This document shows positions 1,588-61,495 of a stretch of 64,000 bases of DNA, in pieces (positions within the stretch are counted from its first letter, which is position 1; the number at the start of each line of letters is the position of its first letter). The DNA comes from Macrostomum hystrix (taxonomy: Eukaryota > Animalia > Platyhelminthes): positions 4,836,001 through 4,900,000 of the forward strand of contig CATNEN010000002.1 in assembly GCA_950097015.1 (NCBI GenBank). The letters run 5' to 3'. The notes below the pieces were generated by a model. That model did no database searches, was not told where the DNA came from, and was given only the letters and a program-made list of their open reading frames with translations. A program made the position numbers and the translations under genes.

Positions 1588-1591
1588 GTAT

Positions 1592-1973
1592 GGATAGTAA
1601 TAATAATAATAATAATAGTAATAATAATAATTGCAGCAGGGCTGCGGGCAATGGCACAACGCTTGGTGATACTAGACCCGCAGCCAGCGAGGAGGCAATT
1701 TAGCCATTTTCGCTGACTCCTGAGCACACCCGCACACAGATAGTGTACGCAGGAATACGCTCACACAGGTGTGTACATCTGCCCTGACTTTCTAATCGCC
1801 AGGCGGTGTACACTTTCACCGTTCCTTGGAAGTTAGCCCTATTATGGGCGAAAGCCTTGACAAGCCTTCTCGCTGCGACAGCGCCCTAATTTAATGTGAC
1901 CTCGTCGCGGAATCGAGCTCAGGGACGTTGGCGCGAGAGACAAACGCGTTAACCACTCTGCAATTCACCCCCT
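1592..1973 (-). mobile_element. tRNA-derived SINE (family A), antisense, filling intron 1588-1975 of cGLR1
   Basis: Minus strand begins AGGGGGTGAATTGCAGAGTGGTTAACG (A box) ... GAGCTCGATTCC (B box) and ends in a (TTA)n tail. Flanked by TSD AGGTAT at 1586-1591 and 1974-1979. Homologous to 15285-15646 and 22447-22624. Confidence 0.9.
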
Positions 1974-8685: not shown

Positions 8686-9029
8686 ATTGTTTAAACTGCA
8701 TTTGAAATCCGGCTATAGTGGAAATGAAACTGTTTTTTTCAGCTAGTCTTGTGCTAGAAGTTTGGCCTAATTATTGATTCAAATTTCTCCCAGTAATCCT
8801 GTGGCGGCGGACTCTAGGACGGTAACAATCGGTCTATTATTTAAAAATTGGATGGCTATGAAAAATGTTGAAAATTTATAGGAACATACAGAATCAGAGG
8901 ACGAAATCAATTTAGACATGCTGCTTGTAGGGAAAATGCTTTGAATGCGTTGAATAGTCAGCGAAAGACGGATTTGTTTTTAAGATAAGCAGAAGAAAGT
9001 AACTGAGACGGAGGAGTGAGTCAGAGTAA

Positions 9030-10697
9030 TACAGAGAGTGGCATTGGAATATAGAGAGTGACATTGGAATATGGAGAGTGACATTGGAATATGGAGAGTG
9101 ACATTGCAATATGGAGAGTGACATTGGAATATGGAGAGTGACATTGCAATATGGAGAGTGACATTGGAATATGGAGAGTGACATTGCAATATGGAGAGTG
9201 ACATTGCAATATGGAGAGTGACATTGGAATTCAGAGAGTGAAATCGGAATTCAGAGAGTGACATTGGAATTAAGAGAGTGACATCGGAATTCAGAGAGTG
9301 ACATTCGAATACAGAGAGTGACATGGCAATACAGAGAGTGACATTGAAATTCAGAGAGTGACATTGGAATTCAGAGAGTGACATCGGAATTCAGAGAGTG
9401 ACATGGGAATTCAGAGAGTGACACTAGAATGTAAAGAGTGACATTCGAATACAGAGAGTGACATGGCAATACAGAGAGTGACATTGGAATTCAGAGAGTG
9501 ACATCGAAATTCAGAGAGTGACATTGGAATTCAGAGAGTGAAATCGGAATTCATAGAGTGACATGGTAATTCAGAGAGTGACATGGGAATTCAGAGAGTG
9601 ACACTAGAATGAAAAGAGTGACATTCGAATACAGAGAGTGACATGGCAATACAGAGAGTGACATTGGAATTCAGAGAGTGACATCTGAATTCAGAGAGTG
9701 ACATTGGAATTCAGAGAGTGAAATCGGAATTCATAGAGTGACATGGTAATTCAGAGAGTGACATGGGAATTCAGAGAGTGACACTAGAATGAAAAGAGTG
9801 ACATGACAATTCAGAGAGTTACATTGGAATTCAGAGAGTGACATGGGAATTCAGAGAGTGACATGGGAATTCAGAGAGTGACACTAGAATGAAAAGAGTG
9901 ACATGACAATTCAGAGAGTTACATTGGAATTCAGAGAGTGACATTGGAATTCTGAGAGTGACATTGGAATTCAGAGAGTGACATTGGAATTCATAGAGTG
10001 ACATGGTAATTCAGAGAGTGACATTGGAATTCAGAGAGGGACATTGGAATTCAGAGAGTGACATTGGAATTCAGAGAGTGACATTGGAATTCAGAGAGTG
10101 ACATGGGAATTCAGAGAGCGACATTGGAATTCAGAGAGTGACATTGGAATTCAGAGAGCGACATTGGAATTCAGAGAGTGACATTGGAATTCAGAGAGTG
10201 ACATTGGAATTCAGAGAGTGAAATCGGAATTCATAGAGTGACATGGTAATTCAGAGAGTGACATGGGAATTCAGAGAGTGACACTAGAATGAAAAGAGTG
10301 ACATGACAATTCAGAGAGTTACATTGGAATTCAGAGAGTGACATGGGAATTCAGAGAGTGACATGGGAATTCAGAGAGTGACACTAGAATGAAAACAGTG
10401 ACATGACAATTCAGAGAGTTACATTGGAATTCAGAGAGTGACATTGGAATTCTGAGAGTGACATTGGAATTCAGAGAGTGACATTGGAATTCAGAGAGCG
10501 ACATTGGAATTCAGAGAGCGACATTGGAATTCAGAGAGTGACATGGGGATTCAGAGAGCGACATTGGAATTCAGAGAGTGACATTGGAATTCAGAGAGCG
10601 ACATTGGAATTCAGAGAGCGACATTGGAATTCAGAGAGTGACATTGGAATTCAGAGAGTGACATTGGAATTCAGAGAGTGACATTGGAATACAGAGA
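9030..10697. repeat. 20-nt minisatellite (GAGAGTGACATTGGAATTCA)n, ~83 copies with higher-order blocks
   Basis: Direct inspection; variant blocks (ACACTAGAATGAAAAG, ACATGACAATTC) recur periodically. Confidence 0.95.
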
Positions 10698-11099
10698 GAA
10701 GGATCGCGCAGGAGAGTTAGAGTCAGGGAACGCAGATCATGACAATATGCTTTCCTCAGCACTCGCAAGCCAGAGCGTGTGTTAGTTAATGCAAAATATT
10801 TACCGACCTCAAGTGCCAGCGAATTTCTGCTTGGCTCGGGTTAGGTAGGTAGTTAGGGTTGTGCCTTAGCCAGGTGAGAAAGGAGAGTGAGATTTGAGCA
10901 TGACGGATTCATTGCTACCCCCAATAGTGATGGATGACAAAACTGCCTGACCGAGTGCTGGCTGGGGTTTGTTTTTGTTAAACTGGAAAACCCGGCTACT
11001 AACTGATTGCCTCAGTTCAGGGCTCGCTGAATAAATTTAATATTATTATATTTCTGAGCAACTGTTTTATATAAACAAAGCAATGTTTGTCGAGTCAAG

Positions 11100-22950: not shown

Positions 22951-23981
22951 CGATCATTTCGGGGCTTAGTTGGAGGTTTGCGAAGTAGTGACTTGCGGAG
23001 ATGCGCATTATTCTGTGCAACCAAAGCTAATTAAAAAATAGCTTAACCCCTGCCTTCTGCATGTCTGCTTGTTTGTGTTTGTGTTTGTGCGTTGGGCTCG
23101 GTGAGGCATTGTATGGGGGTGGGGCGGGTGTGCGCCAGCCATGCGTGCTCTGAGCGGCGAGGTTTCACCAGCCGTCTGCGCGCGTGGCTTGGTCCTCTCG
23201 TCCCTACCCTTCAGGCATCTAAGTCCTCCCTTGGTTTGGTCTGCTCTGTGCGTGTGCGGGCCTGGGGTGAGAGGCACTCCGGCTACCGCCCCCTTCCCCG
23301 CTTGGCTTGGTGCTGTGTGTGAGGTGCCAGGGTGTGTCCAGGGGTCCAGATGGCGGGATGGGCGACTCCCGCCTAGTTCGCCCGCCTGGGGGCATGCTGT
23401 TCCTGCGCTTGTGCGACAAGTGCCCTAGGCCCTCCTGCAATTAAGTATGTAAAAAATAATTCATTCAAGTACGAACTGATAGTTATTAAAACCTGACTGT
23501 GTGCCTGAGCCCTGAAAATAGGAATCTATACATTAAATAAGCCTGGCTTAAAATTGGACCGAATTCTCACCTGTTAACAGGCTATACAAAATTATAGAAA
23601 ATTCTCTCCTGTTAGAAGAATTTAATTACAGTACCAATTCCTCCATCAACATCTTTTACTTTTCTCATATTGATCAGAATCCTATTCTCAGAATTCTCCC
23701 ATGCTGAAACGAATTCTCACTATTTAGAAAGAATTCTGGCTTTATAGACAGAACTGAAATGTCGCAAGCAATAGCAGCAGCTAGCCAACAACAATGAGCA
23801 ACTCGGAGCAGAGAGGCATCTTGAAATGGCTTCCAATTGGCTGAGCTGAGTTATAAATACTTGGTTTTTATTCAGTGGAAAGCTTAAACAAACTTGGCTG
23901 CAATTGAAAATCTAAGCGCTTAACGCACCTTACAATTTTTTTCCCTTTCTAAATTTGCTGTTACGTGTCCTGCTTTTCCCG

Positions 23982-26900
23982 ATGAACTCGCTTAATCCTG
24001 AAGAGAAGCAGCCTGATTCAGCGTCACTCGCTGATGAAGAGCTGCTGGCTGCCATCAGAGACGATGACGTGGCCTCAGTAGATCGACTCATTGCCAGTGG
24101 CAACAGCGTCGATGCCCTCATTGCGTTTAAAGGCACGTTTTGGACACCAGCAATGCTTGCGTGCGAATTCGGAAGACAGGAAATCCTGATTAGGCTCATC
24201 AATGGCAGAGCGGATGTAGACAAGCAGAACTTAAGAGGAACCACAGCATTGTGGGTTGCATCCAAAAAAGGTTATCAGCTGCTAGTGAATTCGCTTATCA
24301 AATCACAAGCTGACATCAACATTCAACAATATCAGGGCGCATCACCTCTCCACATTGCCTCACGCAACGGCCATCATGAGGTAGCTCGCTTACTCATTCA
24401 AGCAGGAGCCGACGTCAATCTTCGAGAGAAAGCTAAAGGCGCATCACCTCTCTACATTGCCTCACAAATCGGCCATCATGAGGTGGCTCGCTTACTCATT
24501 CAAGCAGGAGCCGACGTCAATCTTCGAGAGAAAGCTAAAGGCGCATCACCTCTCTACATTGCCTCACAAATCGGCCATCATGAGGTGGCTCGCTCACTCA
24601 TTCAAGCTGGAGCCGACGTCAATCTTCAAGAGAAAGCTAAAGGCGCATCACCTCTCTTCATTGCCTCAAAAAACGGCCTTCATGAGGTAGCTCGCTCACT
24701 CATTCAAGCAGGAGCTGACGTCAATCTTCCAGATAAAGCTAATGGCTACTCACCTCTTCACATTGCCTCATACAACGGCCATCATGAGTTGGCTCGCTCA
24801 CTCATTCAAGCAGGAGCCGACGTCAATCTCCAAGATAAAGCTTATGGCTTCTCACCTCTTCTCATTGCGTCAAGTGGCGGCCATCAAGAGGTAGCTCGCT
24901 CACTCATTCAAGCAGGAGCCGACGTCAATCTTCAAGACAAAGCTAATGGCTACTCACCTCTCTACATTGCCTCACAACGCGGCCATCATGAGGTAGCTCG
25001 CTCACTCATTCAAGCAGGAGCCGACGTCAATCTTCAAGATAAAGCTAATGGCTACTCACCTCTCTACATTGCCTCACAACGCGGCCATCATGAGGTAGCT
25101 CGCTCACTCATTCAAGCAGGAGCCGACGTCAATCTTCAAGAAAAAGCTTTTGGCTCATCACCTCTATTCATGGCCTCATACAACGGCCATCATGAGTTGG
25201 CTCGCTCACTCATTCAAGCAGGAGCCGACGTCAATCTTCAAGATAAAGCTTATGGCTTCTCACCTCTTCTCATTGCGTCAATTTGCGGCCATCAAGAGGT
25301 AGCTCGCTCACTCATTCAAGCAGGAGCCGACGTCAATCTTCAAGATAAAGCTTATGGCTGCTCACCTCTCTACATTGCCTCAAAAATCGGCCATCATGAG
25401 GTGGCTCGCTTACTCATTCAAACAGGAGCCGACGTCAATCTTCCAGATAAAGCTAATGGCTACCCACCTCTCTTCATTGCCTCACAACACGGCCATCATG
25501 AGGTGGCTCGCTCACTTATTCAAGCAGGAGCCGACGTCAATCTTCAAGAGAAAGCTAATGACGCATCACCTCTTCTCATTGCCTCAGGTAACGGCCATCA
25601 AGAGGTAGCTCGCATACTCATTCAAGCAGGAGCCGACGTCAATCTTCAAGATAAAGTTAATGGCTGCTCACCTCTTCTCATTGCGTCAAGTGGCGGCCAT
25701 CAAGAGGTAGCTCGCTTACTCATTCAAGCAGGAGCCGACGTCAATCTTCAAGAAAATGCTTATGGCTGCTCACCTCTCTACATTGCCTCAAAAATCGGCC
25801 ATCATGAGTTGGCTCGCTTACTCATTCAAGCAGGAGCCGACGTCAATCTTCCAGATAAAGCTAATGGCTTCTCACCTCTTCACATTGCCTCACAACACGG
25901 CCATCATGAGTTGGCTCGCTCACTCATTCAAGCAGGAGCCGACGTCAATCTTCAAGATAAAGCTGATGGCAACTCACCTCTCTACATTGCCTCACAACGC
26001 GGCCATCATGAGGTAGCTCGCTCACTCATTCAAGCAGGAGCCGACGTCAATCTTCAAGATAAAGCTAATGGCTGCTCACCTCTTCACATTGCCTCACAAC
26101 GCGGCCATCATGAGGTGGCTCGCTCACTCATTCAAGCAGGAGCCGACGTCAATCTTCAAGATAAAGCTAATGGCTGCTCACCTCTTCACATTGCCTCACA
26201 TTGCGGCCATCAAGAGGTAGCTCGCTCACTCATTCAAGCAGGAGCCGACGTCAATCTTCAAGAGAAAACTTTTGGCTCATCACCTCTATTCATGGCCTCA
26301 TACAACGGCCATCATGAGTTGGCTCGCTCACTCATTCAAGCAGGAGCCGACGTCAATCTTCAAGATAAAGCTTATGGCTTCTCACCTCTTCTCATTGCGT
26401 CAATTTGCGGCCATCAAGAGGTAGCTCGCTCACTCATTCAAGCAGGAGCCGACGTCAATCTTCAAGATAAAGCTTATGGCTGCTCACCTCTCTACATTGC
26501 CTCACAACGCGGCCATCATAAGGTAGCTCGCTCACTTATTCAAGCAGGAGCCGACATCAATCTTCAAGATAAAGCTAATGGCTGCTCACCTCTTCACATT
26601 GCCTCACAACGCGGCCATCATGAGGTAGCTCGCTCACTCATTCAAGCAGGAGCCGACGTCAATCTTCAAGAGAAAACTTTTGGCTCATCACCTCTGTTCA
26701 TGGCCTCATACAACGGCCATCATGAGTTGGCTCGCTCACTCATTCAAGCAGGAGCCGACGTCAATCTTCAAGATAAAGCTTATGGCTTCTCACCTCTTCT
26801 CATTGCGTCAAGTTGTGGCCATCAAGAGGTAGCTCGCTCACTCATTCAAGCAGGAGCCGACGTCAATCTTCAAGATAAAGCTAATGGCTGCTCACCTCTC

Positions 26901-28663
26901 TACATTGCCTCACAACGCGGCCATCATAAGGTAGCTCGCTCACTTATTCAAGCAGGAGCCGACGTCAATCTTCAAGAGAAAACTTTTGGCTCATCACCTC
27001 TGTTCATGGCCTCATACAACGGCCATCATGAGTTGGCTCGCTCACTCATTCAAGCAGGAGCCGACGTCAATCTTCAAGATAAAGCTTATGGCTTCTCACC
27101 TCTTCTCATTGCGTCAAGTTGTGGCCATCAAGAGGTAGCTCGCTCACTCATTCAAGCAGGAGCCGACGTCAATCTTCAAGATAAAGCTTATGGCTACTCA
27201 CCTCTCTACATTGCCTCAAAAATCGGCCATCCTGAGGTGGCTCGCTTACTCATTCAAACAGGAGCCGACGTCAATCTTCAAGATAAAGCTAATGGCTACT
27301 CACCTCTCTACATTGCTTTAGGTTACGGCCATCAAGAGGTAGCTCGCATACTCATTCAAGCAGGAGCCGACGTCAATCTTCAAGATAAAGCTAATGGCAA
27401 CTCACCTCTCTACATTGCCTCACAACGCGGCCATCATAAGGTAGCTCGCTCACTTATTCAAGCAGGAGCCGACGTCAATCTTCAAGATAAAGCTAATGGC
27501 TACTCACCTCTTCACATTGCCTCACTTTTCGGACGTCATGAGGTGGCTCGCTCACTCATTCAAGCAGGAGCCGACGTCAATCTTCAAGAGAAAGCTTATG
27601 GCTTCTCACCTCTCTACATTGCTTTAGGTTACGGCCATCAAGAGGTAGCTCGCATACTCATTCAAGCAGGAGCCGACGTCAATCTTCAAGATAAAGCTAA
27701 TGGCCGCTTACCTCTTCACATTGCCTCACTTTTCGGACGTCATGAGGTAGCTCGCTCACTCATTCAAGCAGGAGCCGACGTCAATCTTCAAGAGAAAGCT
27801 AATGACGCATCACCTCTCCACATTGCCTCAGAAAATGGCTATCATGAGCTGGCTCGCTCACTCATTCAAGCAGGAGCCGACGTCAATCTTCAAGAGAAAG
27901 CTTATGGCTGCTCACCTCTTCACATTGCCTCACATTGCGGCCATCCTGAGGTAGCTCGCTCACTCATTCAAGCAGGAGCCGACGTCAATCTTCAAGAGAA
28001 AACTTTTGGCTCATCACCTCTATTCATGGCCTCATACAACGGCCATCATGAGTTGGCTCGCTCACTCATTCAAGCAGGAGCCGACGTCAATCTTCAAGCG
28101 AAAGCTAATGGCTTCTCACCTCTCTACATTGCCTCACATTGCGGCCATCAAGAGGTAGCTCGCTCACTCATTCAAGCAGGAGCCGACGTCAATCTTCAAG
28201 ATAAAGCTAATGGCTACTCACCTCTTCACATTGCCTCACATTGCGGCCATCAAGAGGTAGCTCGCTTACTCATTCAAGCAGGAGCCGACGTCAATCTTCA
28301 AGAGAAAGCTTATGGCTTCTCACCTCTTCACATTGCCTCACATTGCGGCCATCAAGAGGTAGCTCGCTCACTCATTCAAGCAGGAGCCGACGTCAATCTT
28401 CAAGATAAAGCTTATGGCTACTCACCTCTCTACATTGCCTCACATTGCGGCCATCAAGAGGTAGCTCGCTCACTCATTCAAGCAGGAGCCGACGTCAATC
28501 TTCAAGATAAAGCTAATGGCTACTCACCTCTCTACATTGCCTCACAACGCGGCCATCATGAGGTAGCTCGCTCACTCATTCAAGCAGGAGCCGACGGAGC
28601 CCTTGCAGCTCTAGATCTTCATGCCTTATTTGAGTTGGGCGATCGCCAGACATGCAGCAGAAG
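23982..28663 (+). CDS. ANK-cGLR exon 1: ~3-4 divergent ankyrin repeats plus 41 tandem 34-aa ankyrin repeats
   Basis: Uninterrupted ORF from ATG 23982; 102-nt period from 24408 to 28589 (41 units, consensus ADVNLQDKANGxSPLxIASxxGHHEVARSLIQAG); strong donor AAG|GTATGT at 28663/28664 (phase 2). Confidence 0.9.
24408..28589 (+). repeat. Coding tandem array, 41 x 102 nt (ankyrin repeats)
   Basis: Counted from the translated ORF; framework TCATTCAAGCAGGAGCCGACGTCAATCTTCAAGA is nearly invariant. Confidence 0.97.
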
Positions 28664-29559
28664 GTATGTCTGTACTTGCTATGCCCGGATAATTTTGATA
28701 AAAATAATGCCCTCATCGGGCTAGTTGTTCAGCCTACGTAGCACTTGCGTGGCGCATCTGAAGGCTGTGCACTGCTCTTCAGTCCCTGCTTCAGAACCCC
28801 CGACCTAGGCTGGAACCCCTAGTTGCCCCTACATTTATCTGCCCTTGCCTTTGGATTTTCTGCAGTCATCACCTTCTTACGCTGCACTCCAGTGCGTTGT
28901 CTGCCTTGTGCAGTCCGTGCTCGATCGCGTTCTCTCGATCTTCAACCTGCTTGTTTTAGAATATCAGTGTTCTTTCAATTCAGCGATTGAATGAGAAAGA
29001 CTTATGATAAGTACAAAATTGGCTTGCCCAAATCGTTTCTGATAGCTGGAAGTAAATCATAAATCATAGATTTGAATCAGCTGTGGTGCAATTCAATATT
29101 AGCATACGCCCATACAAGCAAAGGTGCACCTTCTTACTTTAGAACTCTGCCCCTGGAGGCACAATATGTTCATAAACGTCTCAAAAGTTTTTTCGCTTTC
29201 AAAAGTTTTCAGGACAAAATTTTGCTTTTAGAGATATGCTTACACACCTGGATACTTTTAAATATTGTTCACCGCTTCTAGAAAACGCTAATCTTTACTG
29301 CCTAAACTGGGCGAAAATTTACTGGGGCCACTCTGCGCATGGTCAATTTAAGGAAGGGAAATTTCTAAGAGTTATAAAACCGGTTTCACTCTGTAAGAAA
29401 TCTTAACAGAATAGTGAAATATGAAAAGTGAATTCTTTGCCAGAATGCTTCCCTAAATGTTCAAAAACAGAACAACATGCTGAGATAAATTTTCTCAGGC
29501 TCCTCAGAGCCTCCCAGCCTTACTCAAACTCAGCACTGCCGCCTCCCTTCACCCTTCAG

Positions 29560-29909
29560 CGTCGCACCCAGCGACGCAGAGCTGAGTCGGCAGCTGCACT
29601 CCAAGCTCTCTCAGTCAGGATTCGTGGACTCCAGAGCCGCCTTGCAGATCGCTGTGGCTGACGTCTTGCAGGATGTTCTCAGGAAGAGAATGAACTCTGA
29701 GAACTGGTTCGTTATGGGCAGCTTCTCTGAGGCTTGGGGCAACAGCCTGGTCTCTCTGGATGGAGGAACTGACATCGACTCTGACATCGATGTTATTCAG
29801 CTGATTCCAGGAAGGCCGATTCACCCGAGAGATGTGTGCGAGTGCGACCGAGTGGAGGCTGCTCAGACAGTGGAACTCAGCAATGGCCACATCCTGAGCT
29901 CCGGATTCG
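29560..29909 (+). CDS. ANK-cGLR exon 2: nucleotidyltransferase active-site exon
   Basis: Polypyrimidine acceptor GCCTCCCTTCACCCTTCAG (ends 29559, phase 2); encodes FVMGSFSEAWG...TDIDSDIDVIQL (hG[S]...DhD motif); donor G|GTGAGA at 29909/29910 (phase 1). Confidence 0.85.
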
Positions 29910-30614
29910 GTGAGAATTTCCTGCCAGAGACTGTCGGGATGGCCGGGACAAGAATTGAACATGTGTTTGGCTTAGTGAATCTTGTCTTTAAATGAAACAG
30001 CAATCGATAAAAAAAGTAACAAATTTTCAATCTAGACAGGCAATTCCAGGCAAAATGGAGAGTTGGAATTTAGTTTCTGATTTCGCTTCTTCTGCTAAGC
30101 AAGCAGAGGCTTAGCACCCTGTACTAAGTAAACCATGATGCCATAGGATACTTTCTCTGTTTCGTAGGTTCGCTATGATTTCACAGTCACATCATTGCAA
30201 CAACGGCTCATGTAAAATTGAAGGATTTGAAAGAAAGAAATAAAGATAAGAAGAAAGAAAATTGAAGTTTATACACACCAGTTGGCAAATTCATCATTGA
30301 CTAAATCCGGAAGTCAGTGCAAATTAGAGTTACCCATCACGCCCACACCTGCAACAAATCCTAATAAACCGAAGGTATACAAAGAATAAATTTGATTTAT
30401 ACTCTAAATGCTTTTGATCCTTACCTTTATAGTTAGCAAATCGTAGCACTATTTTTTCTGTTTCGATTTTTTGCACCTGTTTGCAGATATAGTAAAATAC
30501 CAAATAGTATTCAAAAATTAAAAAAATATTTTCAAAGATTTTCAAATGTTTTAAAAAATCTGATTTGTAAGCTAATGGCATTTTCTATATTTCTCGAATT
30601 TCCCATTTCTCCAG

Positions 30615-32074
30615 CCTCCAACCCAGCCATTACACAACCTGGATCCACCCTGAAACCGGCTGTGGACCTTGTCACCGCCCGCCGCCTCTGCCGCTACCCT
30701 CCCATCGCGCCGCTGCAGCCACCAAGAGTCTCCAAATCCAACATCCCCCAGTCCGTGCTGCAGTCGCTCGAGCGAGATATTAGCTCTCCCTCATCGCCCT
30801 GTCACGTGGTGCACGCAGCTCCTCCCGGAATGGGGGGCCAGCAGCTCCGAGTGAGCAGCAGCTTCCTGGAGAGGCGACTGCTGCGGAGTCTCAGCACTCT
30901 GCAAGGCCAGCTGTTCGTCACACTCAAGTGGCTGCTGAAGAAGAAAATCTCAAACGTCGGCTTCAAGTCCTATCACGCGAAGACCGTCACGTTCCGAATG
31001 CTGGAGGAGACACCGGCTGAGCAGTGGAAGCCGAAGAATCTCGTGAGTCTCACGAGACGCTCGCTGCAGATGCTGCTCGACGGTGTGGAGAGCGGCTTCA
31101 GATCAGACACACCTGACGGTCGGATCCTGGAGCACTTCTTCCTGAGCGATGCCGCTGTGTACCTGAAAGGCTTGAAGTCGCCCACATCAGCTGAGAGAGT
31201 GAGCGAAGCGTTGAATCGGGCAGCCGGCGCATTGAGAGACGCCATGGCTGAGCTGCCTCAGCTGCTGCTGCAGTTCGAGGACAGTCTGCGACCCGTCACC
31301 GACTCGGGCCGATTCCGATTCCACCCGTTCCTCATCCTGCCGTTTCTCAATGACCGACCCGTGTCAGAAGCCAAGACATGCGAGTTCCACGATATCTACG
31401 ACCTCGTGAGAGAGTCGGTGCTTTGTCTGTCCGATGGAGACCGCAGTCCGCAGTCCCGAGAAAGTCTCACAGAGCTGATCGACAAACTGCCAGACTGCGC
31501 CCGATCAGTGCGAGAGTCTCTCAGAGCGCTGGCGTGCCTGAAGTTCGGCGACCGACTTAGTGCAGCGAGAGTTGTGAGCGACTGCGGGCCGCTCAGTGCG
31601 AGCAGAGGCATCGATTGGGGAGCTGAGAGGTCGGCGAGTGAGGCCACTGCGGACTTTGTGTGGCAGCACCTGAGGAGCCGAGACTCCGCCTGGAAATTCT
31701 GCTTCGCGTTTGACGAGCGACCGAAGCTGCCGATTGAGCACAAAGTCTTTGTCGACTGCTTTCCGCTGCAGATGGAGAACAGCAACAAACACTTCTACCT
31801 GAACTTTGACGCCCTGCTGCGGGCTCTTCGCAATGAGTTGTCAGGAGCAGGAGACGAGAGCGATCAGGACTGGATCCGGGACGTGGCTCAGAGTAAGGAT
31901 GCGGACGAGCAGGAGCTGCTGGTGGCTGCGGCGATCTGCGAAGATCTGGAGCTGCTGCGGCTGCTGCGCAGAAGAATAAGGCAGCTGTGCCGGCTGCCGG
32001 GGTGGCTGCAGCAGAAGATTGAGAGGCTGAGCAGTCAAGGCGAAGATCGCCAAAACCAAATCGGATTGCGTTGA
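30615..32074 (+). CDS. ANK-cGLR exon 3: Mab-21/cGAS-like lobe plus C-terminal extension
   Basis: Acceptor TTTCTCCAG (phase 1); [39 protein letters not shown]; stop TGA at 32072-32074. Three-exon join is 6492 nt = 2163 aa plus stop. Confidence 0.9.
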
Positions 32075-32186: not shown

Positions 32187-32895
32187 GTTAATGGGGGGTT
32201 AATTGGAAGTGAGACTTTCAGTTAATGGCCAAGGCCACGAGCGGCGATTAGCCGCGAGTGGCAATTTGGCCATTGTTCGAAATGTCACTTCACGTTAATG
32301 ACATCTCTGTCATAGACAACTGCAGTTAATGACAAGTCTCTTACCTCCCTTTCGCACATAGACAAATCGATCAATGCAGCTAATTGGAAGTGAGACTTTC
32401 AGTTAATGGCCAAATTGCCACTCGCGGCTAATCGCCGCTCGTGGCCTTGGCCATTAACTGAAAGTCTCACTTCCAATTAACCCCCCATTAACTGAAAGTC
32501 TCACTTCCAATTAACCCCCCATTAACTGAAAGTCTCACTTCCAATTAACCCCCCATTAACTGAAAGTCTCACTTCCAATTAACCCCCCATTAACTGAAAG
32601 TCTCACTTCCAATTAACCCCCCATTAACTGAAAGTCTCACTTCCAATTAACCCCCCATTAACTGAAAGTCTCACTTCCAATTAACCCCCCATTAACTGAA
32701 AGTCTCACTTCCAATTAACCCCCCATTAACTGAAAGTCTCACTTCCAATTAACCCCCCATTAACTGAAAGTCTCACTTCCAATTAGCTGCATTGATCGAT
32801 TTGTCTATGTGCGAAAGGGAGGTAAGAGACTTGTCATTAACTGCAGTTGTCTATGACAGAGATGTCATTAACGTGAAGTGACATTTCGAACAATG
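32187..32895. repeat. Interleaved inverted repeats X-Y-X'-(34-nt)n-Y'
   Basis: X 32187-32274 is the reverse complement of 32405-32492; Y 32271-32409 is the reverse complement of 32757-32895; ~10 copies of ATTAACTGAAAGTCTCACTTCCAATTAACCCCCC at 32453-32785. Confidence 0.9.
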
Positions 32896-33090
32896 AGAAG
32901 CAAACTAGGAGACACATTTTAATTAATGCATTTCCTGATCGAATTTTACGTTGGAGACAAGGATGGATATGGCATAACAAAGCTGGCTCTTGACCACTAA
33001 AATTCTTCAGGCGAAAAACCACCTCTAGGGCCAGTGACCATCGAACTTCAGGCCAGTGACCATCGAACTTCAGGCCAGTGACCATCGACA

Positions 33091-33812
33091 ATCCCGATCC
33101 CAGATCCCGATCCCAGATCCCGATCCCAGATCCCGATCCCAGATCCCGATCCCAGATCCCGATCCCAGATCCCGATCCCAGATCCCGATCCCAGATCCCG
33201 ATCCCAGATCCCGATCCCAGATCCCGATCCCAGATCCCGATCCCAGATCCCGATCCCAGATCCCGATCCCAGATCCCGATCCCAGATCCCGATCCCAGAT
33301 CCCGATCCCAGATCCCGATCCCAGATCCCGATCCCAGATCCCGATCCCAGATCCCGATCCCAGATCCCGATCCCAGATCCCGATCCCAGATCCCGATCCC
33401 AGATCCCGATCCCAGATCCCGATCCCAGATCCCGATCCCAGATCCCGATCCCAGATCCCGATCCCAGATCCCGATCCCAGATCCCGATCCCAGATCCCGA
33501 TCCCAGATCCCGATCCCAGATCCCGATCCCAGATCCCGATCCCAGATCCCGATCCCAGATCCCGATCCCAGATCCCGATCCCAGATCCCGATCCCAGATC
33601 CCGATCCCAGATCCCGATCCCAGATCCCGATCCCAGATCCCGATCCCAGATCCCGATCCCAGATCCCGATCCCAGATCCCGATCCCAGATCCCGATCCCA
33701 GATCCCGATCCCAGATCCCGATCCCAGATCCCGATCCCAGATCCCGATCCCAGATCCCGATCCCAGATCCCGATCCCAGATCCCGATCCCAGATCCCGAT
33801 CCCAGATCCCAG
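33091..33812. repeat. Near-perfect 13-nt array (CCCGATCCCAGAT)n, ~55 copies
   Basis: Direct inspection; preceded by 3 copies of a 23-nt unit at ~33028-33088. Confidence 0.97.
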
Positions 33813-34179
33813 ATCTCAGAGCTAACCCAGATCTTAGCGTTGAAATTTGTTTTTAATTTTTGTATATACATTGTTTAGTTTTGTACATACTTTGTCTGCT
33901 TCATATTTGCCTGCACCTGGCACTAATGCCCACCATTGCACAGTTTGCTGCTTAGTTTTCATGCTTGGTATTTAGTTTTTATAATGTTTTTATGAAATAT
34001 TTTGGTTTGCTAACAAGCCTCTGTAAAACTGTACTTCTAGCTTTCAGTGTATTTGGTTGAAGTGACCGACTGCGATTGCCAGACACGAATCCTCACAATC
34101 AGCTGACAGATGGTGCCAAATCCCTACTCGAATCAGATCCCAAAACCAGACTCACGAACCAGAATCCACAACCAGAATT

Positions 34180-36540: not shown

Positions 36541-37170
36541 CATTAGAGTCTGCTGGATCCCGCAGTGTTCAGCAGGACAGCCGGTACAACAACACGGATA
36601 GTTCAGAGCTATACAGAATGCTATAGGCCAAGTGATATCCAGTTGATTACCCTTGCAGCCTGTGCAACACAAACAGAACTGGATTTTCTGCTGATTTTGG
36701 CACTAATGAACAATTAAAAATTGTCTAGAAAAAGAAAATGTCACCAAGGATGGCAATGACCATTCTAAACTTGCCATCAGTCAATCAAATGCCAGACAAG
36801 TTCCCCTCTGATGCATTGGCACAGAACTGATGTCGACTAGCTGGTCAGAAACAAGCAGAAGAAACACTTGTTAGGGCAATAACAGTAACACAGCTGTAGT
36901 TTGCGGGCAGCTGCACTGTTAGCATATGTGGGTGTTCCTGGATGGCTTCACCGCAAATTGCAGACATGGCGGAGATACGATAATTTCACCTGGAGATGCA
37001 TGTCCAGGGACAATTTGGGATTGGCATTGCTGAGGGAGGGGCAGAGTAGAGAAATTTAAAAGTTCAACAAAAACTTATTAAATTATTTGAGGAATCTTTC
37101 AGTCACTGGAAGTTATTAAAGAAACTTTTCAGTTTCTCGATCAAATTTTCCTATTGAGACAGTAGTATTC

Positions 37171-38600
37171 CACTCACCTGAAATATCTATTCAACTCACC
37201 TGAAATATCTGTTCCACTCACCTGAAATATATATTCAACTCACCTGAAATATCTGTTCCACTCACCTGAAATATCTATTCAACTCACCTGAAATATCTGT
37301 TCCACTCACCTGAAATATCTATTCAACTCACCTGAAATATCTGTTCCACTCACCTGAAATATCTATTCCACTCACCTGAAATATCTATTCCACTCACCTG
37401 AGATATCTGTTCCACTCACCTGAAATATCTATTCCACTCACCTGAGATATCTGTTCCACTCACCTGAAATATCTGTTCCACTCAGCTGAAATATCTGTTC
37501 CACTCACCTGAAATATCTGTTCCACTCACCTGAAATATCTATTCAACTCACCTGAAATATCTGTTCCACTCACCTGAAATATCTGTTCCACTCACCTGAA
37601 ATATCTATTCCACTCACCTGAGATATCTGTTCCACTAACCTGAAATATCTGTTCCACTCAGCTGAAATATCTGTTCCACTCACCTGAAATATCTGTTCCA
37701 CTCACCTGAAATATCTGTTCCACTCACCTGAAATATCTGTTCCACTCACCTGAAATATCTGTTCCACTCACCTGAGATATCTGTTCCACTCACCTGAAAT
37801 ATCTGTTCCACTCACCTGAGATATCTGTTCCACACACCTGAGATGTCTGTTCCACTCACCTGAGATATCTGTTCCACTCACCTGAAATATCTGTTCCACT
37901 CACCTGAAATATCTGTTCCACTCACCTGAGATATCTGTTACACTCACCTGAGATATCTGTTCCACTCACCTGAAATATCTGTTCCACTCACCTGAAATAT
38001 CTGTTCCACTCACCTGAGATATCTGTTCCACTCACCTGAAATATCTGTTCCACTCACCTGAAATATCTATTCCACTCACCTGAGATATCTGTTCCACTAA
38101 CCTGAGATATCTGTTCCACTCACCTGAAATATCTATTCCACTCACCTGAGATATCTGTTCCACTCACCTGAAATATCTATTCCACTCACCTGAGATATCT
38201 GTTCCACTCACCTGAAATATCTGTTCCACTAACCTGAAATATCTGTTCCACTCACCTGAAATATCTGTTCCACTCACCTGAAATATCTGTTCCACTCACC
38301 TGAGATATCTGTTCCACTCACCTGAGATATCTGTTCCACTAACCTGAAATATCTGTTCCACTCACCTGAAATATCTGTTCCACTCACCTGAAATATCTAT
38401 TCCACTCACCTGAGATATCTGTTCCACTAACCTGAAATATCTGTTCCACTCACCTGAAATATCTGTTCCACTCACCTGAAATATCTGTTCCACTCACCTG
38501 AGATATCTGTTCCACTCACCTGAAATATCTGTTCCACTCACCTGAAATATCTGTTCCACTCACCTGAGATATCTGTTCCACTCACCTGAGATATCTGTTC
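37171..38600. repeat. 22-nt minisatellite (CCACTCACCTGAAATATCTGTT)n, ~64 copies
   Basis: Direct inspection; the minus-strand unit contains TTTCAG|GTGAGT. Confidence 0.97.
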
Positions 38601-39832: not shown

Positions 39833-40629
39833 AAAGATGGTCATTGCTAGCGAGACCTCTCCTCCTCCCTGCTGTCGCTGAAAATGGCAGCCTATATTGT
39901 CGAATTTTGTATCGACTTCGACGTAGCGATGTACGCTACGACGTGAAGTACTTTAATTATTTTGCAGAATACTGGTCAAATTGCAGCATCAGCTTTGTTA
40001 GTGTTTCTTTTTCTTCTAATTTTCTATCATTGACAGTTAAGAACTATTAGCTACAGTCAAAGCAAATATTTGTTAGGTCTTCTCGCTGTGAGAAAAAACT
40101 AAAAGTTTTTCGAGTGTAGCAGCAAGTGTCATTCGATTCTTAACTAAGGAAATGCTTTTCGAGCATTGCTACAAGCGTTATCGATTCGAAACTGAATGAA
40201 GACTGTTCAAGCATTCGTAGAAGTCAGCGTTATTTTATTTTCAAAACGAAAGAAAAGTGTTTCAAACATTAGGCCTACTGCAAATCGTTGTTAGATTCAA
40301 AACTCATGGAAAATACCTATATTGCAATCGTAGCTAATGGCATTATTCCTTTTTTAAATGTTGCGTTTTTTCAAGCAGGAAATGTAACATTTTCCCTTTA
40401 TTTTGAAAGCACAAAAATTCGAAGGAAAACATAAAACGAAAAAGAATTCAGCGTTAGATATAAATCTAACGCTGCGTGAAATTTGTGGAGAAAACCATTA
40501 GATATCTAGGGAATATCATGATTTCATGAAGAGATAGCATGCGATTTCCAGGAGAAAGAATGGGATTTTCAGGGAATAATTCAGGGAATCTGGGATTTTG
40601 AGGGTAATGCTTATTATTTTCAAAAGGAT

Positions 40630-42125
40630 AGAATGAATTATCGAGGCGGTAGAATGAGTTATCGAGTGGGTAGAATGAGTTATCGAGTGGGTAGAATGAA
40701 TTATCGAGTGGGTAGAATGAGTAATCGAGGGGGTAGAATGAGTTATCGAGTGGGTAGAATGAATTATCGAGTGGGTAGAATGAGTTATCGAGTGGGTGGA
40801 ATGAGTTATCGAGTGGGTAGAATGAGTTATCGAGTGGGTAGAATGAATTATCGAGTGGGTAGAATGAGTTATCGAGGGTGTAGAATGAGTTATCGAGTGG
40901 GTAGAATGAGTTATCGAGGGGGTAGAATGAGTTATCGAGGGGGTAGAATGAGTTATCGAGTGGGTAGAATGAATTATCGAGTGGGTAGAATGAGTTATCG
41001 AGGGGGTAGAATGAATTATCGAGTGGGTAGAATGAATTATCGAGTGGGTAGAATGAGTTATCGAGGGGGTAGAATGAATTATCGAGTGGGTAGAATGAGT
41101 TATCGAGTGGGTAGCATGAGTTATCGAGTGGGTAGAATGAGTTATCGAGAAGGTAGCATGAGTTATCGAGTGGGTAGAATGAGTTATCGAGTGGGTAGAA
41201 TGAGTTATCGAGTGGGAAGAATGAGTTATCGAGGGGGTAGAATGAGTTATCGAGTGGGTAGAATGAGTTATCGAGTGGGAAGAATGAGTTATCGAGGAGG
41301 TAGAATGAGTTATCGAGTGGATAGAATGAGTTATCGAGGGGGTAGAATGAGTTATCGAGTGGGTAGAATGAGTTATCGAGTGGGTAGAATGAGTTATCGA
41401 GTGGGTAGAATGAGTTATCGAGTGGGTAGAGTGAGTTATCGAGAAGGTAGCATCAATGATTGAAGGGAAGCATGAATTATCGATAGGGAAGCATGAATTA
41501 TCGATAGGGAAGCATGAATTATCAATAGGGTAGCATGAATTATCGATAGAGTAGCATGAATTATCGATAGGGAAGCATGAATTATCGATAGGGAAGCATG
41601 AATTATCGATAGGGAAGCATGAATTATTGATAGGGAAGCAAGAATTATTGATAGGGTAGCATGAATTATCGATAGGGTAGCATGAATTATCGATAGGGTA
41701 GCATGAATTATTGATAGGGTAGCATGAATTATCGATAGGGAAGCATGAATTATTGATAGGGAAGCATGAATTATTGATAGGGTAGCAAGAATTATTGATA
41801 GGGTAGCATGAATTATCGATAGGGTAGCATGAATTATTGATAGGGAAGCATGAATTATTGATAGGGAAGCATGAATTATTGATAGGGAAGCAAGAATTAT
41901 TGATAGGGTAGCATGAATTATCGATAGGGTAGCATGAATTATTGATAGGGTAGCATGAATTATCGATAGGGAAGCATGAATTATTGATAGGGAAGCATGA
42001 ATTATTGATAGGGTAGCAAGAATTATTGATAGGGTAGCATGAATTATCGATAGGGTAGCATGAATTATCGATAGGGTAGCATGAATTATCGATAGGGTAG
42101 CATGAATTATCGATAGGGTAGCATG
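40630..42125. repeat. Two adjacent related 21-nt arrays: (AGAATGAGTTATCGAGTGGGT)n 40630-41450 and (GCATGAATTATCGATAGGGTA)n 41460-42125
   Basis: Direct inspection; explains the 557-aa low-complexity ORF. Confidence 0.97.
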
Positions 42126-42209
42126 AGTTTTCGACTGAATTATGCTTTAATTCGCCCATGCTACCCACCAGTTTATCGAGGGGTAGCATTAGTTATTATC
42201 GAAATGTCC

Positions 42210-46019: not shown

Positions 46020-48345
46020 CACAAATCAACACAGATCCCAAACCACACTCACAACAACACAGATCCCATACCACACCCACAACAACACAGATCCCAAACC
46101 ACACCCACAACAACACATCCCATACCACACCCACAACAACACATCCCATACCACACCCACAACAACACAGATCCCATACCACACCCACAACAACACATCC
46201 CATACCACACCCACAACACAGATCCCAAACCACACCCACAACAACACAGATCACATACCACACCCACAACAACACAGATCCCATACCACACCCACAACAA
46301 CACAGATCCCATACCACACCCACAACAACACAGATCCCAAACCACACCCACAACAACACAGATCCCATACCACACCCATAACAACACAGATCCCAAACCA
46401 CACCCATAACAACACAGATCCCAAACCACACCCACAACAACACAGATCCCAAACCACACCCACAACAACACAGATCCCAAACCACACCCACAACAACACA
46501 GATTCCAAACCACACCCACAACAACACAGATCCCAAACCACACCCACAACAACACAGATCCCATACCACACCCACAACATCACAGATCCCAAACCACACC
46601 CACAACAACACAGATCCCATACCACACCCACAACAACACAGATCCCATACCACACCCACAACAACACAGATCCCAAACCACAACCACAACAACACAGATC
46701 CCAAACCACACCCACAACATCACAGATCCCAAACCACACCCACAACAACACAGATCCCATACCACACCCACAACAACACAGATCCCAAACCACACCCACA
46801 ACAACACAGATCCCAAACCACACCCACAACAACACAGATCCCATACCACACCCACAACATCACAGATCCCATACCACACCCACAACAACACAGATCCCAT
46901 ACCACACCCACAACAACACAGATCCCAAACCACACCCACAACAACACAGATCCCAAACCACACCCACAACAACACAGATCCCAAACCACACCCACAACAA
47001 CACAGATCCCAAACCACACCTACAACAACACAGATCCCATACCACACCCACAACAACACAGATCCCATACCACACCCACAACAACACAGATCCCATACCA
47101 CACTCACAACAACACAGATCCCATACCACACCCACAACAACACAGATCCCATACCACACCCACAACAACACAGATCCCATACCACACCCACAACAACACA
47201 GATCCCAAACCACACCCACAACAACACAGATCCCATACCACACCCACAACAACACAGATCCCATACCACACCCACAACAACACAGATCCCATACCACACC
47301 CACAACAACACAGATCCCATACCACACCCACAACAACACAGATCCCAAACCACACCCACAACAACACAGATCCCATACCACACCCACAACAACACAGATC
47401 CCAAACCACACCCATAACAACACAGATCCCATACCACACCCACAACAACACAGATCCCATACCACACCCACAACAACACAGATCCCATACCACACCCACA
47501 ACATCACAGATCCCATACCACACCCACAACAACACAGATCCCAAACTACACCCACAACAACACAGATCCCAAACCACACCCACAACAACACAGATCCCAT
47601 ACCACACCCACAACAACACAGATCACATACCACACACACAAAAACACAGATCCCAAACCACACCCACAACAACACAGATCCCAAACTACACCCACAACAA
47701 CACAGATCCCAAACCACACCCACAACAACACAGATCCCATACCACACCCACAACAACACAGATCCCAAACCACACCCACAACAACACAGATCCCATACCA
47801 CACCCACAACAACACAGATCCCATACCACACCCACAACAACACAGATCCCATACCACACCCACAACAACACAGATCACATACCACACCCACAACAACACA
47901 GATCCCAAACCACACCCACAACAACACAGATCCCATACCACACCCACAACAACACAGATCCCATACCACACCCACAACAACACAGATCCCATACCACACC
48001 CACAACAACACAGATCCCATACCACACCCACAACAACACAGATCCCATACCACACCCACAACAACACAGATCCCATATCACACACACAACATCACAGATC
48101 CCAAACCACACCCACAACAACACAGATCACATACCACACCCACAACAACACAGATCCCATACCACACCCACAACAACACAGATCCCAAACCACACCCACA
48201 ACAACACAGATCCCAAACCACACCCACAACAACACAGATCCCATACCACACTCACAACAACACAGATCCCATACCACACCCACAACAACACAGATCCCAT
48301 ACCACACCCATAACAACACAGATCCCAAACCACACCCACAATAAA
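46020..48345. repeat. 28-nt minisatellite (CACAGATCCCATACCACACCCACAACAA)n, ~80 copies
   Basis: Direct inspection; source of the many Cys/Val/Gly/Trp ORFs on the minus strand. Confidence 0.97.
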
Positions 48346-48729
48346 ACATTTACCAAATTTTAATTATAGACTGTCTAATAAAGGATAAAGACTCGAGGTA
48401 AAAAATATTTAGCATTTGCACACTTGCAAACTTGACAATAATTTAGTCAGTTCGAGACAATTATCTAAATTTATCGTTCTCAGTAAGCACAGCTAGTTTA
48501 TTAATCGTGTGGTACCGTTCCATTTGAATGCAGATCATCTATCACGAAGCAAAGTTACCTTTCACATTAAAACAAGCATAAAATTTTCCTACTTTTTATT
48601 GGAGAAAAAAAATCATAAGAAGCAGGTAGTACAGAATCATACAGCAGAATAACTTGTGCAAAACGGTTGAGATAGTTAGCAAGATTTGTACAGCCGATAC
48701 AGGCAAGGGTGCGAAATAAGAGTTCGGGA

Positions 48730-61480: not shown

Positions 61481-61495
61481 GCTAAAACATTGCAG

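What the first reader, a model, noticed from the sequence alone, without database searches (positions are those of the whole stretch)
24408..28589. A natural DARPin-like library: variation confined to predicted binding-surface residues within a homogenised 102-nt repeat
Seen in sequence: all 41 units share a nearly invariant DNA framework, including synonymous sites (CTCATTCAAGCAGGAGCCGACGTCAATCTT). Non-synonymous change concentrates at the beta-turn (K-A/T/V-N/Y/K/F/D), the residue after G (Y/F/C/S/A/N/R), the residue after SPL (Y/H/F/L) and the two residues after IAS (QR, YN, SG, IC, KI, QH, GN, HC, SC, LF, GY, EN). Established knowledge: these correspond to the randomised positions of the designed ankyrin consensus DxxGxTPLHLAAxxGH. 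Inference: concerted evolution of the scaffold plus diversifying selection on the ligand-binding face, as described for het-e/het-d WD40 arrays and ANK/TPR arrays in fungal NLRs.
Basis: partly seen in the sequence, partly recalled or inferred. Interest (0 to 1): 0.85.

Follow-up and report, generated by a model that had tools for sequence, protein, structure and literature searches.

The report
Hypervariable ankyrin array in flatworm cGAS-like gene
A flatworm gene for a cGAS-like immune-type enzyme starts with 41 near-identical ankyrin repeats that differ almost only at five residues on the face that normally grips a ligand, the pattern known from fungal immune receptors, though nobody has shown what it binds or whether it varies between individuals.

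Summary
Window 24339-28520 holds 41 in-phase 102-nt (34-aa) ankyrin units and a truncated 42nd, with no indels, in one open frame.

- **Where the variation sits:** five codons (unit positions 1, 5, 9, 10, 33) carry 55% of all nucleotide differences. Their non-synonymous rate is 3.5-13 times the array's synonymous rate. The other 29 codons give omega about 0.6.
- **Match to designed ankyrin libraries:** four of the five sites align with DARPin library positions 3, 5, 13 and 14. The fifth is framework position 9 on the same face of the inner helix. DARPin positions 2 and 33 hardly vary here.
- **Signs of concerted evolution:** identity does not fall with distance between units. Exact 236-243-nt duplicates lie 3 and 11 units apart. 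Each paralogous gene has its own repeat framework.
- **Gene context:** the array is exon 1 of a three-exon ankyrin-cGAS-like (cGLR) gene of a Macrostomum-type flatworm.

The pattern is the one described for fungal NLR repeats, here on a different signalling domain. Variation between individuals, the ligand and any immune role remain untested.

The scan found the same pattern before on other DNA of this genome (s1-085000, s1-085023). The ANK-cGLR family is in a 2023 catalogue. I found no paper describing the hypervariable arrays.

The parts
23976..28663 (+). Exon 1 of the ANK-cGLR gene: start Met, N-terminal cap, the whole ankyrin array and a short linker. It ends in a phase-2 split codon before a GT donor at 28664.
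   Evidence: Open frame. Sequence at the donor. One contig in run X3 skips 28664-29559 with GT..AG ends.
23976..24338 (+). N-terminal cap and about two divergent, non-homogenised ankyrin repeats, shared in outline with M. lignano paralogues.
   Evidence: Pfam Ank/Ank_2 E 1e-24. Paralogue N-termini.
24339..28520 (+). 41 complete 102-nt (34-aa) homogenised ankyrin units. Unit i starts at 24339+102(i-1). The hypervariable codons 1, 5, 9, 10 and 33 lie at offsets +0, +12, +24, +27 and +96.
28521..28595 (+). Truncated 42nd unit (25 codons, signature Y/Y/QR) that runs straight into the linker. There is no divergent C-terminal capping repeat like the one in the paralogues.
24384..24425 (+). First copy of the near-invariant half of each unit (codons 16-29: end of helix 2 and the loop). 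It is nearly invariant at silent sites too (pS 0.03) and is the likely substrate for exchange between units.
26640..26882 (+). 243-nt stretch repeated exactly at 26946-27188, 3 units away. It spans hypervariable codons, so it marks a recent duplication or conversion.
25147..25382 (+). 236-nt stretch repeated exactly at 26269-26504, 11 units away.
28664..29559 (+). Intron 1 (GT..AG).
   Evidence: joint. Run X5 has no contig here. Run X1 has an unspliced contig that differs from the window at one letter.
29560..29909 (+). Exon 2: linker and the nucleotidyltransferase core, with a Gly-Ser motif and an Asp-x-Asp motif.
   Evidence: Contigs of the RNA-like runs lie on it.
29910..30614 (+). Intron 2 (GT..AG).
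   Evidence: Contigs in X2 and X3 leave at 29909 and carry 25 letters; the first 14 match the window from 30615.
30615..32074 (+). Exon 3: the candidate third catalytic Asp, the Mab-21/cGAS-like C-terminal lobe and a family-specific tail, up to the stop codon.
   Evidence: Pfam Mab-21_C E 0.0017, below cut-off. The family profile hits only cGAS in the PDB, E 3e-6. Tiles onto the paralogues.

Best explanation
The array is the sensor-side domain of an ankyrin-cGAS-like receptor (ANK-cGLR) gene of a Macrostomum-type flatworm. About 44 ankyrin repeats form one continuous solenoid.

Shown:
- The 102-nt units are kept alike, or were recently amplified, by unequal crossing-over or gene conversion.
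- Amino-acid diversity is concentrated at five codons. One is at the beta-hairpin tip and the others form a stripe along the inner helix (i, i+4, i+8 and i+9), so they line the ligand groove.
- Duplication and shuffling of one- to three-unit blocks then rearrange these binding modules.

Inferred:
- The groove binds a variable, probably non-self or fast-evolving, ligand.
- Binding controls the fused nucleotidyltransferase, which would make a nucleotide signal for STING.

It therefore works like the highly internally conserved ANK/TPR/WD sensor arrays of fungal NLRs, but it is coupled to a different signalling domain.
For: Array structure:
- Period 102, no indels.
- 55% of pairwise nucleotide differences fall in 15 of the 102 nt. 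Framework amino-acid identity is 0.89 and identity at the five hypervariable (HV) sites is 0.21.

Selection tests:
- pN at HV codons is 0.47, against pS 0.09 elsewhere.
- In HV codons, positions 1+2 have pi 0.53 against 0.27 at position 3. The framework shows the reverse, 0.04 against 0.11.
- My own per-site codon likelihood test gives omega 5.4-13.9 with p<=6e-6 at sites 1, 5, 9, 10 and 33.
- The partition model gives omega_HV 7.9 or 12.7 on two trees, omega_rest 0.64, and a likelihood-ratio p<=1.5e-19.
- A tree-free count gives at least 29 amino-acid changes on 12.7 non-synonymous sites, against 16 silent changes on 24.6 sites (Poisson p 1.6e-8).

Exchange between units:
- Identity is flat with lag.
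- There are exact 236- and 243-nt duplicates.
- 190 of 528 site pairs fail the four-gamete test.
- Framework identity is 0.90 within the gene and 0.60-0.71 to paralogue arrays. The 34-aa turn variant is fixed in all 41 units here but is rare in paralogues.

Structure:
- AF2 model of units 4-13 has pLDDT 95.6, with helix 1 at unit residues 3-10.
- TM-score is 0.89 to ankyrin-1 and ankyrin-B solenoids.
- The alignment to DARPins puts the HV sites at library positions 3, 5, 13 and 14. DARPins bind targets through those concave-face positions (PMC8229355).

Gene context:
- Exons 2 and 3 tile onto M. lignano ANK-cGLR proteins.
- The family profile hits only cGAS in the PDB.
- Exon-shaped contig cover and intron-skipping joints are seen in public runs.
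Against: - There are no data from other individuals, haplotypes or species for this array, so repeat-number or order polymorphism is unknown.
- Tree-based omega tests are inflated by recombination, and recombination is rife here. All tests compare paralogous units inside one gene, not alleles.
- No coordinates were available, so solvent exposure was not computed.
- Position 18 in helix 2 also shows nominal omega above 1.
- The paralogue P0119 is homogenised with almost no helix-1 variation, so homogenisation does not always go with diversification.
- Many transcript contigs are only 90-99% like this copy, so expression of this exact copy is not proven.
- Pfam Mab-21_C is below its cut-off for this copy.
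Confidence: 0.6

Rival explanations
1. Recent burst amplification without positive selection. A few older, already diverged units were copied many times by block duplication. The hot sites are only the least constrained surface positions, and the apparent omega above 1 comes from recombination and from counting copies.
For: - Multi-unit blocks recur (for example the S/F/YN unit followed by F/L/IC or SC), and some units are identical (9=20, 10=21, 24=27).
- There are only 15 pair types at positions 9-10.
- Recombination is known to inflate site tests.
Against: - Neutral sites cannot change faster than silent sites. Even the tree-free minimum count gives 3.5 times the silent rate at the five codons.
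- 25-65% of pairwise comparisons at each HV codon differ at 2-3 nucleotides, yet third positions of the same codons are quieter.
- There are 28 distinct helix-1 signatures in 41 units, and four-gamete failures occur down to 1 nt apart.
- The same positions are the most variable in paralogue arrays and in unrelated oyster arrays.
Confidence: 0.2
2. A non-immune scaffold or spring. The long solenoid is a structural or multivalent adaptor for the animal's own proteins, and the variable face tunes binding to several endogenous partners along its length.
For: - Long ANK solenoids such as ankyrin-1/B and NOMPC are the best structural matches.
- No ligand or infection data exist.
Against: - Endogenous partner binding predicts purifying selection on contact residues, not omega of 5-14.
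- The fused domain belongs to the cGAS-like receptor family, which is known as pattern-recognition enzymes (Li et al. 2023).
- The family is expanded and fast-diverging: the best relative is 68% identical in the enzyme part.
Confidence: 0.13
3. Assembly artefact. The unit number or order is a product of mis-assembly of a shorter real array.
For: - Tandem arrays of 4.2 kb are hard to assemble.
- The public contigs laid here cannot span the array.
- No second assembly of this locus was found.
Against: - 38 of the 41 units are distinct at DNA level, which gives an assembler unique anchors.
- The frame stays open for 4.7 kb with no indel.
- The hypervariability pattern does not depend on exact copy number.
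Confidence: 0.04

Closest known systems
Highly internally conserved (HIC) ANK/TPR/WD40 sensor arrays of fungal NLRs (het-e/het-d HNWD genes; P. anserina Pa_3_8560; Dyrka et al. 2014, PMC4986451; Ament-Velasquez et al. 2025, PMC12222747)
   Same: - Repeats are 80-100% alike within a gene.
- A handful of positions is hypervariable and positively selected (five in the fungal ANK case, five here), on the inner helix and beta-hairpin of the concave face.
- There are signs of unequal crossing-over and unit shuffling.
   Different: - The host is an animal.
- The signalling partner is a cGAS-like nucleotidyltransferase, not a NACHT/NB-ARC module.
- The array has 41 units, against 7 to more than 16 in the Podospora alleles and 21 in the largest fungal array that paper analysed.
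- Repeat-number polymorphism is shown in fungi and untested here.
Designed ankyrin repeat protein (DARPin) libraries
   Same: - A consensus-like framework with diversity at positions 3, 5, 13 and 14 of the 33-residue module.
- A 10-unit model superposes on an extended DARPin (TM-score 0.83).
   Different: - Library positions 2 and 33 are nearly fixed here.
- Framework position 9 varies (Y/H/F/L).
- There is one extra residue in the beta-turn.
- Cys is common at the variable sites; by my recollection of the library design it is excluded from DARPin libraries.
- The variants sit in tandem in one chain rather than in separate molecules.
ANK-cGLR fusion proteins catalogued by Li et al. 2023 (bioRxiv 10.1101/2023.02.22.529553), including Macrostomum lignano cGLRs
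   Same: - The same domain architecture. Five M. lignano proteins retrieved here have it in full.
- One M. lignano cGLR (PAA86972.1), with the same motifs around the active site, is in that paper's expression table.
   Different: - In the main text and legends I searched, that paper mentions ankyrin only as a domain architecture; I did not read it in full.
- This copy is at most 68% identical to any listed M. lignano protein in the enzyme part, and it has by far the longest array.
Ankyrin-1/ankyrin-B 24-repeat membrane-binding domains and the NOMPC 29-repeat spring
   Same: A long continuous ANK solenoid. These are the best structural matches (TM-score 0.88-0.89, rmsd 2.2-2.5).
   Different: Their repeats are old and divergent from each other, and repeat number is conserved across species. 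They show no homogenisation and no hypervariable code positions.

Membership tests
Ankyrin repeat (Pfam PF00023 / PF12796) | Profile match above the curated cut-off | tested here: met
   Ank 82.6 bits (cut-off 21.1) and Ank_2 86.9 bits on the N-terminal 155 aa. The last partial unit scores 23.3 bits.
Ankyrin repeat (Pfam PF00023 / PF12796) | Helix-turn-helix plus beta-hairpin units stacked into a curved solenoid | tested here: met
   AF2 pLDDT 95.6 and pTM 0.90, with two helices per unit. Foldseek TM-score 0.89 to ankyrin-1 and AnkB.
Ankyrin repeat (Pfam PF00023 / PF12796) | 33-residue period | tested here: not met
   All 41 units have 34 residues. The alignment to DARPins places the extra residue in the beta-turn. 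This is a minor variant and is also seen in a few units of the paralogues.
Fungal-NLR-type HIC hypervariable repeat array | High internal conservation of repeats (Dyrka: 85% or more over at least 100 aa) | tested here: inconclusive
   DNA identity is 88%. Amino-acid identity to the consensus is 84%, pairwise 79%, and 89% over the 29 framework positions. This is at the border of the published threshold, because the hot sites are so diverse.
Fungal-NLR-type HIC hypervariable repeat array | A few positions with an excess of non-synonymous change | tested here: met
   Sites 1, 5, 9, 10 and 33.
Fungal-NLR-type HIC hypervariable repeat array | Hot positions on the concave binding face | tested here: inconclusive
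   The hot sites lie just before and within the inner helix and at the hairpin tip, by secondary structure and by alignment to DARPin positions 3, 5, 9, 13 and 14. No coordinates were available, so exposure was not computed.
Fungal-NLR-type HIC hypervariable repeat array | Repeat-number or order polymorphism between individuals | not testable with these tools
   Only short contigs of public runs were available. There is no second assembly and no metagenome match.
Fungal-NLR-type HIC hypervariable repeat array | Array attached to a NOD/STAND NTPase | tested here: not met
   The downstream exons encode a cGAS-like nucleotidyltransferase, with no NACHT or NB-ARC. So it works like this family but is not a member of it.
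cGAS-like receptor (cGLR / Mab-21 superfamily) | Sequence similarity to cGAS/Mab-21 | tested here: met
   The family profile that includes this gene's exons hits only cGAS chains in the PDB (E 3e-6). Exon 3 alone: cGAS E 0.025 and Pfam Mab-21_C 18.9 bits, below the 24.1 cut-off. A relative is in the Li et al. 2023 cGLR expression table.
cGAS-like receptor (cGLR / Mab-21 superfamily) | Gly-Ser motif and three catalytic acidic residues | tested here: inconclusive
   The GS motif and an Asp-x-Asp motif are in exon 2. A conserved Asp in the 'PAxD' motif is at the start of exon 3. All are conserved across the paralogues. They were assigned by motif and were not aligned to a solved active site.
cGAS-like receptor (cGLR / Mab-21 superfamily) | Ligand-triggered synthesis of a nucleotide second messenger | not testable with these tools
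   This needs biochemistry.
DARPin-library pattern | Diversity at module positions 2, 3, 5, 13, 14 and 33 only (numbering from my knowledge of Binz et al. 2003; visible in the D12 modules) | tested here: not met
   Positions 3, 5, 13 and 14 are hypervariable. Positions 2 and 33 are nearly fixed. Position 9 is hypervariable.

The most novel reading that the evidence does not exclude
Some animals run a germline recognition system that reshuffles itself by recombination. Homogenised ankyrin arrays with a hypervariable groove act as the sensor of cGAS-like enzymes in flatworms, and apparently of STAND NTPases in oysters. This would be convergent with fungal NLR repeat arrays and would let cGLRs sense diverse protein or other non-nucleic-acid ligands.
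Probability: 0.35. Interest if true: 0.8.

Novelty: new variant of a known kind. Interest (0 to 1): 0.6.

Why it matters
The ligands of most animal cGLRs are unknown. The 2023 catalogue lists ankyrin-fused cGLRs only as an architecture.

An array with a homogenised scaffold and five positively selected groove residues points to what the sensor surface is. It gives a testable idea of how such receptors could gain new specificities: unit shuffling rather than point mutation.

It would also extend the fungal NLR repeat-shuffling mode of receptor evolution to animals and to a second signalling chemistry. Oyster STAND proteins show the same positional pattern, which suggests the mode is widespread and under-described in invertebrates.

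For protein engineers, it is a natural experiment on which ankyrin positions tolerate and reward diversity, including position 9 and a lengthened beta-turn.

Tried and rejected
- **The repeat finder on the array:** it only restated the 102-nt period, so I found the block duplicates with a script instead.
- **Search for the same gene in another assembly:** the whole-array protein search returned generic ankyrin proteins, with M. lignano paralogues at 54-56% identity at best. The enzyme exon found at most 68% identity. No orthologue or allele was available for comparing arrays.
- **Metagenome scan for the invariant 30-mer:** no match.
- **Public runs:** all are kept as short contigs, which cannot span or phase the array. 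They gave splice and exon evidence only, and many contigs come from 90-99% similar copies.
- **Exon 2 alone against solved structures:** no hit.
- **Test of the shuffled cassette register:** I asked whether the cassette runs from the hairpin tip to the end of helix 1, rather than in the register I used. The tip residue associates with helix-1 residues on both sides, so the result is inconclusive.
- **Mutation hot-spot explanation:** rejected, because third positions of the hot codons are quieter than first and second positions.
- **Pseudogene reading:** rejected, because all three exons are open and in phase.
Full report
**1. What is there**

Tandem Repeats Finder reports one array at 24342-28596: period 102, 41.7 copies, 88% matches, no indels. 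It lies inside a 1589-codon open frame, 23955-28724 on the + strand, with a Met at 23976. Cutting the frame in the register that begins with the residue after the turn glycine gives 41 complete 34-residue units. Unit i starts at 24339+102(i-1). A 42nd unit breaks off after 'GAD' and runs into a short linker. Of the 41 units, 38 are distinct at DNA level and 37 at protein level.

**2. Where the variation lies**

- Per-codon entropy picks out five codons: 1 (seven residues), 5 (four), 9 (ten), 10 (eight) and 33 (five).
- Codons 13, 15, 18, 30 and 32 vary moderately. The rest are almost fixed.
- The five hot codons are 15% of the unit and carry 55% of all pairwise nucleotide differences.
- Pairwise amino-acid identity is 0.21 at the five hot sites and 0.89 at the other 29.
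- Silent variation exists, at codons 4, 7, 15 and 30. It is higher in codons 1-15 (pS 0.18) than in codons 16-29 (pS 0.03).
- Each unit therefore has a variable half (hairpin tip plus helix 1) and a constant half of about 42 nt.

**3. Is it more than relaxed constraint?** Four tests agree.

- (a) Nei-Gojobori diversity: pN is 0.47 at the hot codons, against pS 0.09 in the rest of the array.
- (b) An internal control against a mutation hot spot: in hot codons, diversity at positions 1+2 is 0.53 against 0.27 at position 3. In the framework it is 0.04 against 0.11.
- (c) A tree-free minimum count: at least 29 amino-acid changes on 12.7 non-synonymous sites, against 16 silent changes on 24.6 silent sites. 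That is a ratio of 3.5 (Poisson p 1.6e-8). The framework ratio is 0.55.
- (d) A codon-likelihood test I wrote myself (GY94-type, F3x4, iqtree tree, fixed silent rate). It gives omega 5.4-13.9 at sites 1, 5, 9, 10 and 33, each with p<=6e-6. Sites 18 and 30 are only nominal.
- A partition model gives omega 7.9 for the hot codons (12.7 on a tree built without them) and 0.64 for the rest, with likelihood-ratio p<=1.5e-19.
- At each hot codon, 19-65% of unit pairs differ at two or three nucleotides.

Caveats: the units recombine, which inflates tree-based tests. All comparisons are among paralogous units of one gene, not among alleles.

**4. Homogenisation**

- DNA identity between units averages 0.88 and does not fall with distance (lags 1-20 all give 0.87-0.90).
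- Exact duplicates of 243 nt (26640-26882 = 26946-27188) and 236 nt (25147-25382 = 26269-26504) lie 3 and 11 units apart and include hot codons.
- 190 of 528 pairs of informative columns show all four gametes, down to adjacent bases.
- Multi-unit blocks recur. For example, a unit with signature S/F/YN is followed by F/L/IC or SC.
- Across genes, framework identity is 0.90 within this array but 0.60-0.71 to the arrays of four M. lignano paralogues. That is about the same as the divergence of the non-repeated enzyme domain.
- The 34-residue turn variant is fixed in all 41 units here and is rare in the paralogues.
- So the units were homogenised or amplified after the genes split, and exchange is recent. 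The data cannot separate steady concerted evolution from repeated bursts.

**5. Structure and mapping**

- An AlphaFold2 model of units 4-13 has mean pLDDT 95.6 and pTM 0.90. Helix 1 is at unit residues 3-10 and helix 2 at 13-21.
- It superposes on ankyrin-1 and ankyrin-B solenoids (TM-score 0.88-0.89, rmsd 2.2-2.5) and on an extended DARPin (TM-score 0.83).
- The sequence alignment to DARPins puts the extra residue in the beta-turn. It equates unit positions 33, 1, 5, 9 and 10 with module positions 3, 5, 9, 13 and 14.
- Positions 5, 9 and 13 are spaced by four, so they form one stripe along the inner helix. Position 14 adjoins them and position 3 is the hairpin tip.
- DARPins contact targets through their randomised concave-face positions (PMC8229355). 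The numbering 2, 3, 5, 13, 14, 33 is from my own knowledge of the original library design. It can be seen in the differing positions of the D12 modules.
- So four of the five hot sites are library positions. Library positions 2 and 33 are nearly fixed here, and framework position 9 varies within Y/H/F/L.
- No coordinates are exposed by the tools, so I could not compute accessibility. The concave-face assignment rests on alignment and helix phase.
- The hot face is rich in Tyr (45), Asn (31), Phe (23), His (20) and Cys (19), with only 2 acidic residues among 205. All 19 cysteines of the units sit at positions 1 or 10.

**6. The gene**

- Downstream, in phase, lie two more exons. Exon 2 (29560-29909) has a Gly-Ser motif and an Asp-x-Asp motif. 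Exon 3 (30615-32074) has a conserved Asp near its start and a weak Mab-21_C match (E 0.0017, below cut-off).
- Both exons tile without gap onto full-length M. lignano proteins that join an ankyrin array to the same domain.
- A profile of that family hits only cGAS among solved structures (E 3e-6).
- Public runs, kept as contigs, cover the three exons far more than the introns, and one run (X5) has no contig on either intron.
- One contig skips 28664-29559 with GT..AG ends. Two contigs leave exon 2 at 29909 and carry 25 letters, the first 14 of which match the window from 30615.
- One run (X1) also holds unspliced contigs, one with a single differing letter and one identical to the window.
- Many exon contigs are only 90-99% alike, so close copies contribute, and expression of this exact copy is not proven.
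- The three exons add up to 2165 codons.
- Earlier notes of this scan call the genome a Macrostomum-type flatworm. Consistent with that, 21 of the 24 relatives of the enzyme exon are M. lignano proteins, at 68% identity at most.

**7. Comparison with what is known**

- Fungal NLRs carry ANK, TPR or WD repeats with high internal conservation, repeat-number polymorphism and positive selection at a few concave-face positions: five in a Podospora ANK gene. Such conserved repeats make up only 0.8% of metazoan ANK/TPR/WD repeats (PMC4986451; PMC12222747).
- A metazoan survey found that concerted evolution of domain repeats is rare and linked to host-pathogen functions (PMC5100051).
- Li et al. 2023 list ANK-cGLR as an architecture and put a M. 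lignano cGLR in their expression table. The passages I searched for ankyrin, fusion and flatworm terms do not discuss the arrays.
- Searches for flatworm cGLR ankyrin hypervariability found no paper.
- The array meets the functional hallmarks of the fungal system that I could test. It fails the membership criterion of a NOD/STAND partner. So it works like a fungal HIC sensor array but is a different architecture.
- This scan reported the same pattern before on other DNA of this genome (s1-085000, s1-085023).

**8. Verdict**

Most likely mechanism (confidence 0.6): unit exchange keeps the scaffold uniform and shuffles binding modules. Selection favours amino-acid diversity at five groove residues of the sensor domain of a cGAS-like enzyme.

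Rivals: neutral burst amplification (0.2), a non-immune scaffold (0.13) and mis-assembly (0.04).

Noticed in passing
Proteins P0002, P0012, P0036, P0052, P0028, P0108 (oyster; hits): Oyster proteins with STAND-type and HEPN-type domains carry 11-29 homogenised 33-aa ankyrin units (80-87% amino-acid identity). Their most variable positions are again unit positions 1, 5, 9, 10 and the beta-turn. The flatworm pattern therefore recurs in unrelated invertebrate immune-type genes. I found no paper on this.
   Followed up: partly
window 24339-28520, unit positions 1 and 10: All 19 cysteines of the 41 units lie at hypervariable positions 1 (9 units) and 10 (10 units), often next to His at positions 5, 9 and 12 (for example units 19 and 36). 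The hot face has only 2 acidic residues among 205. This could hint at metal binding, redox sensing or an anionic ligand.
   Followed up: no
window 633-1703 (+): A second cGAS-like gene fragment lies at the window's start: Pfam Mab-21_C E 1.5e-6, above cut-off. So at least two cGLR genes lie within 30 kb. Its ankyrin part, if any, is off the window.
   Followed up: partly
Protein P0119 (M. lignano, 975 aa): This paralogous ANK-cGLR has 10 units that are 99% identical over positions 1-29. They vary only at position 1 and in the turn, and they mix 33- and 34-residue turns. It is either a freshly homogenised array or one collapsed during assembly.
   Followed up: no
window 28521-28663: This gene has no divergent C-terminal capping repeat. 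The homogenised array ends mid-unit and joins the linker directly, whereas the paralogues keep a distinct last repeat.
   Followed up: no
whole window, e.g. 9028-10698, 37168-38600, 40625-42134, 46027-48348, 60012-61481: The window is packed with long minisatellites of 13-34-nt period, up to 94 copies. Several create spurious long reading frames, for example 32837-33871 and 40516-42189 on the minus strand.
   Followed up: no
window 50320-53722 (-): Exons of a WDR26-like gene (LisH/CTLH and WD40 matches) lie downstream on the opposite strand. It looks like an ordinary housekeeping neighbour.
   Followed up: no
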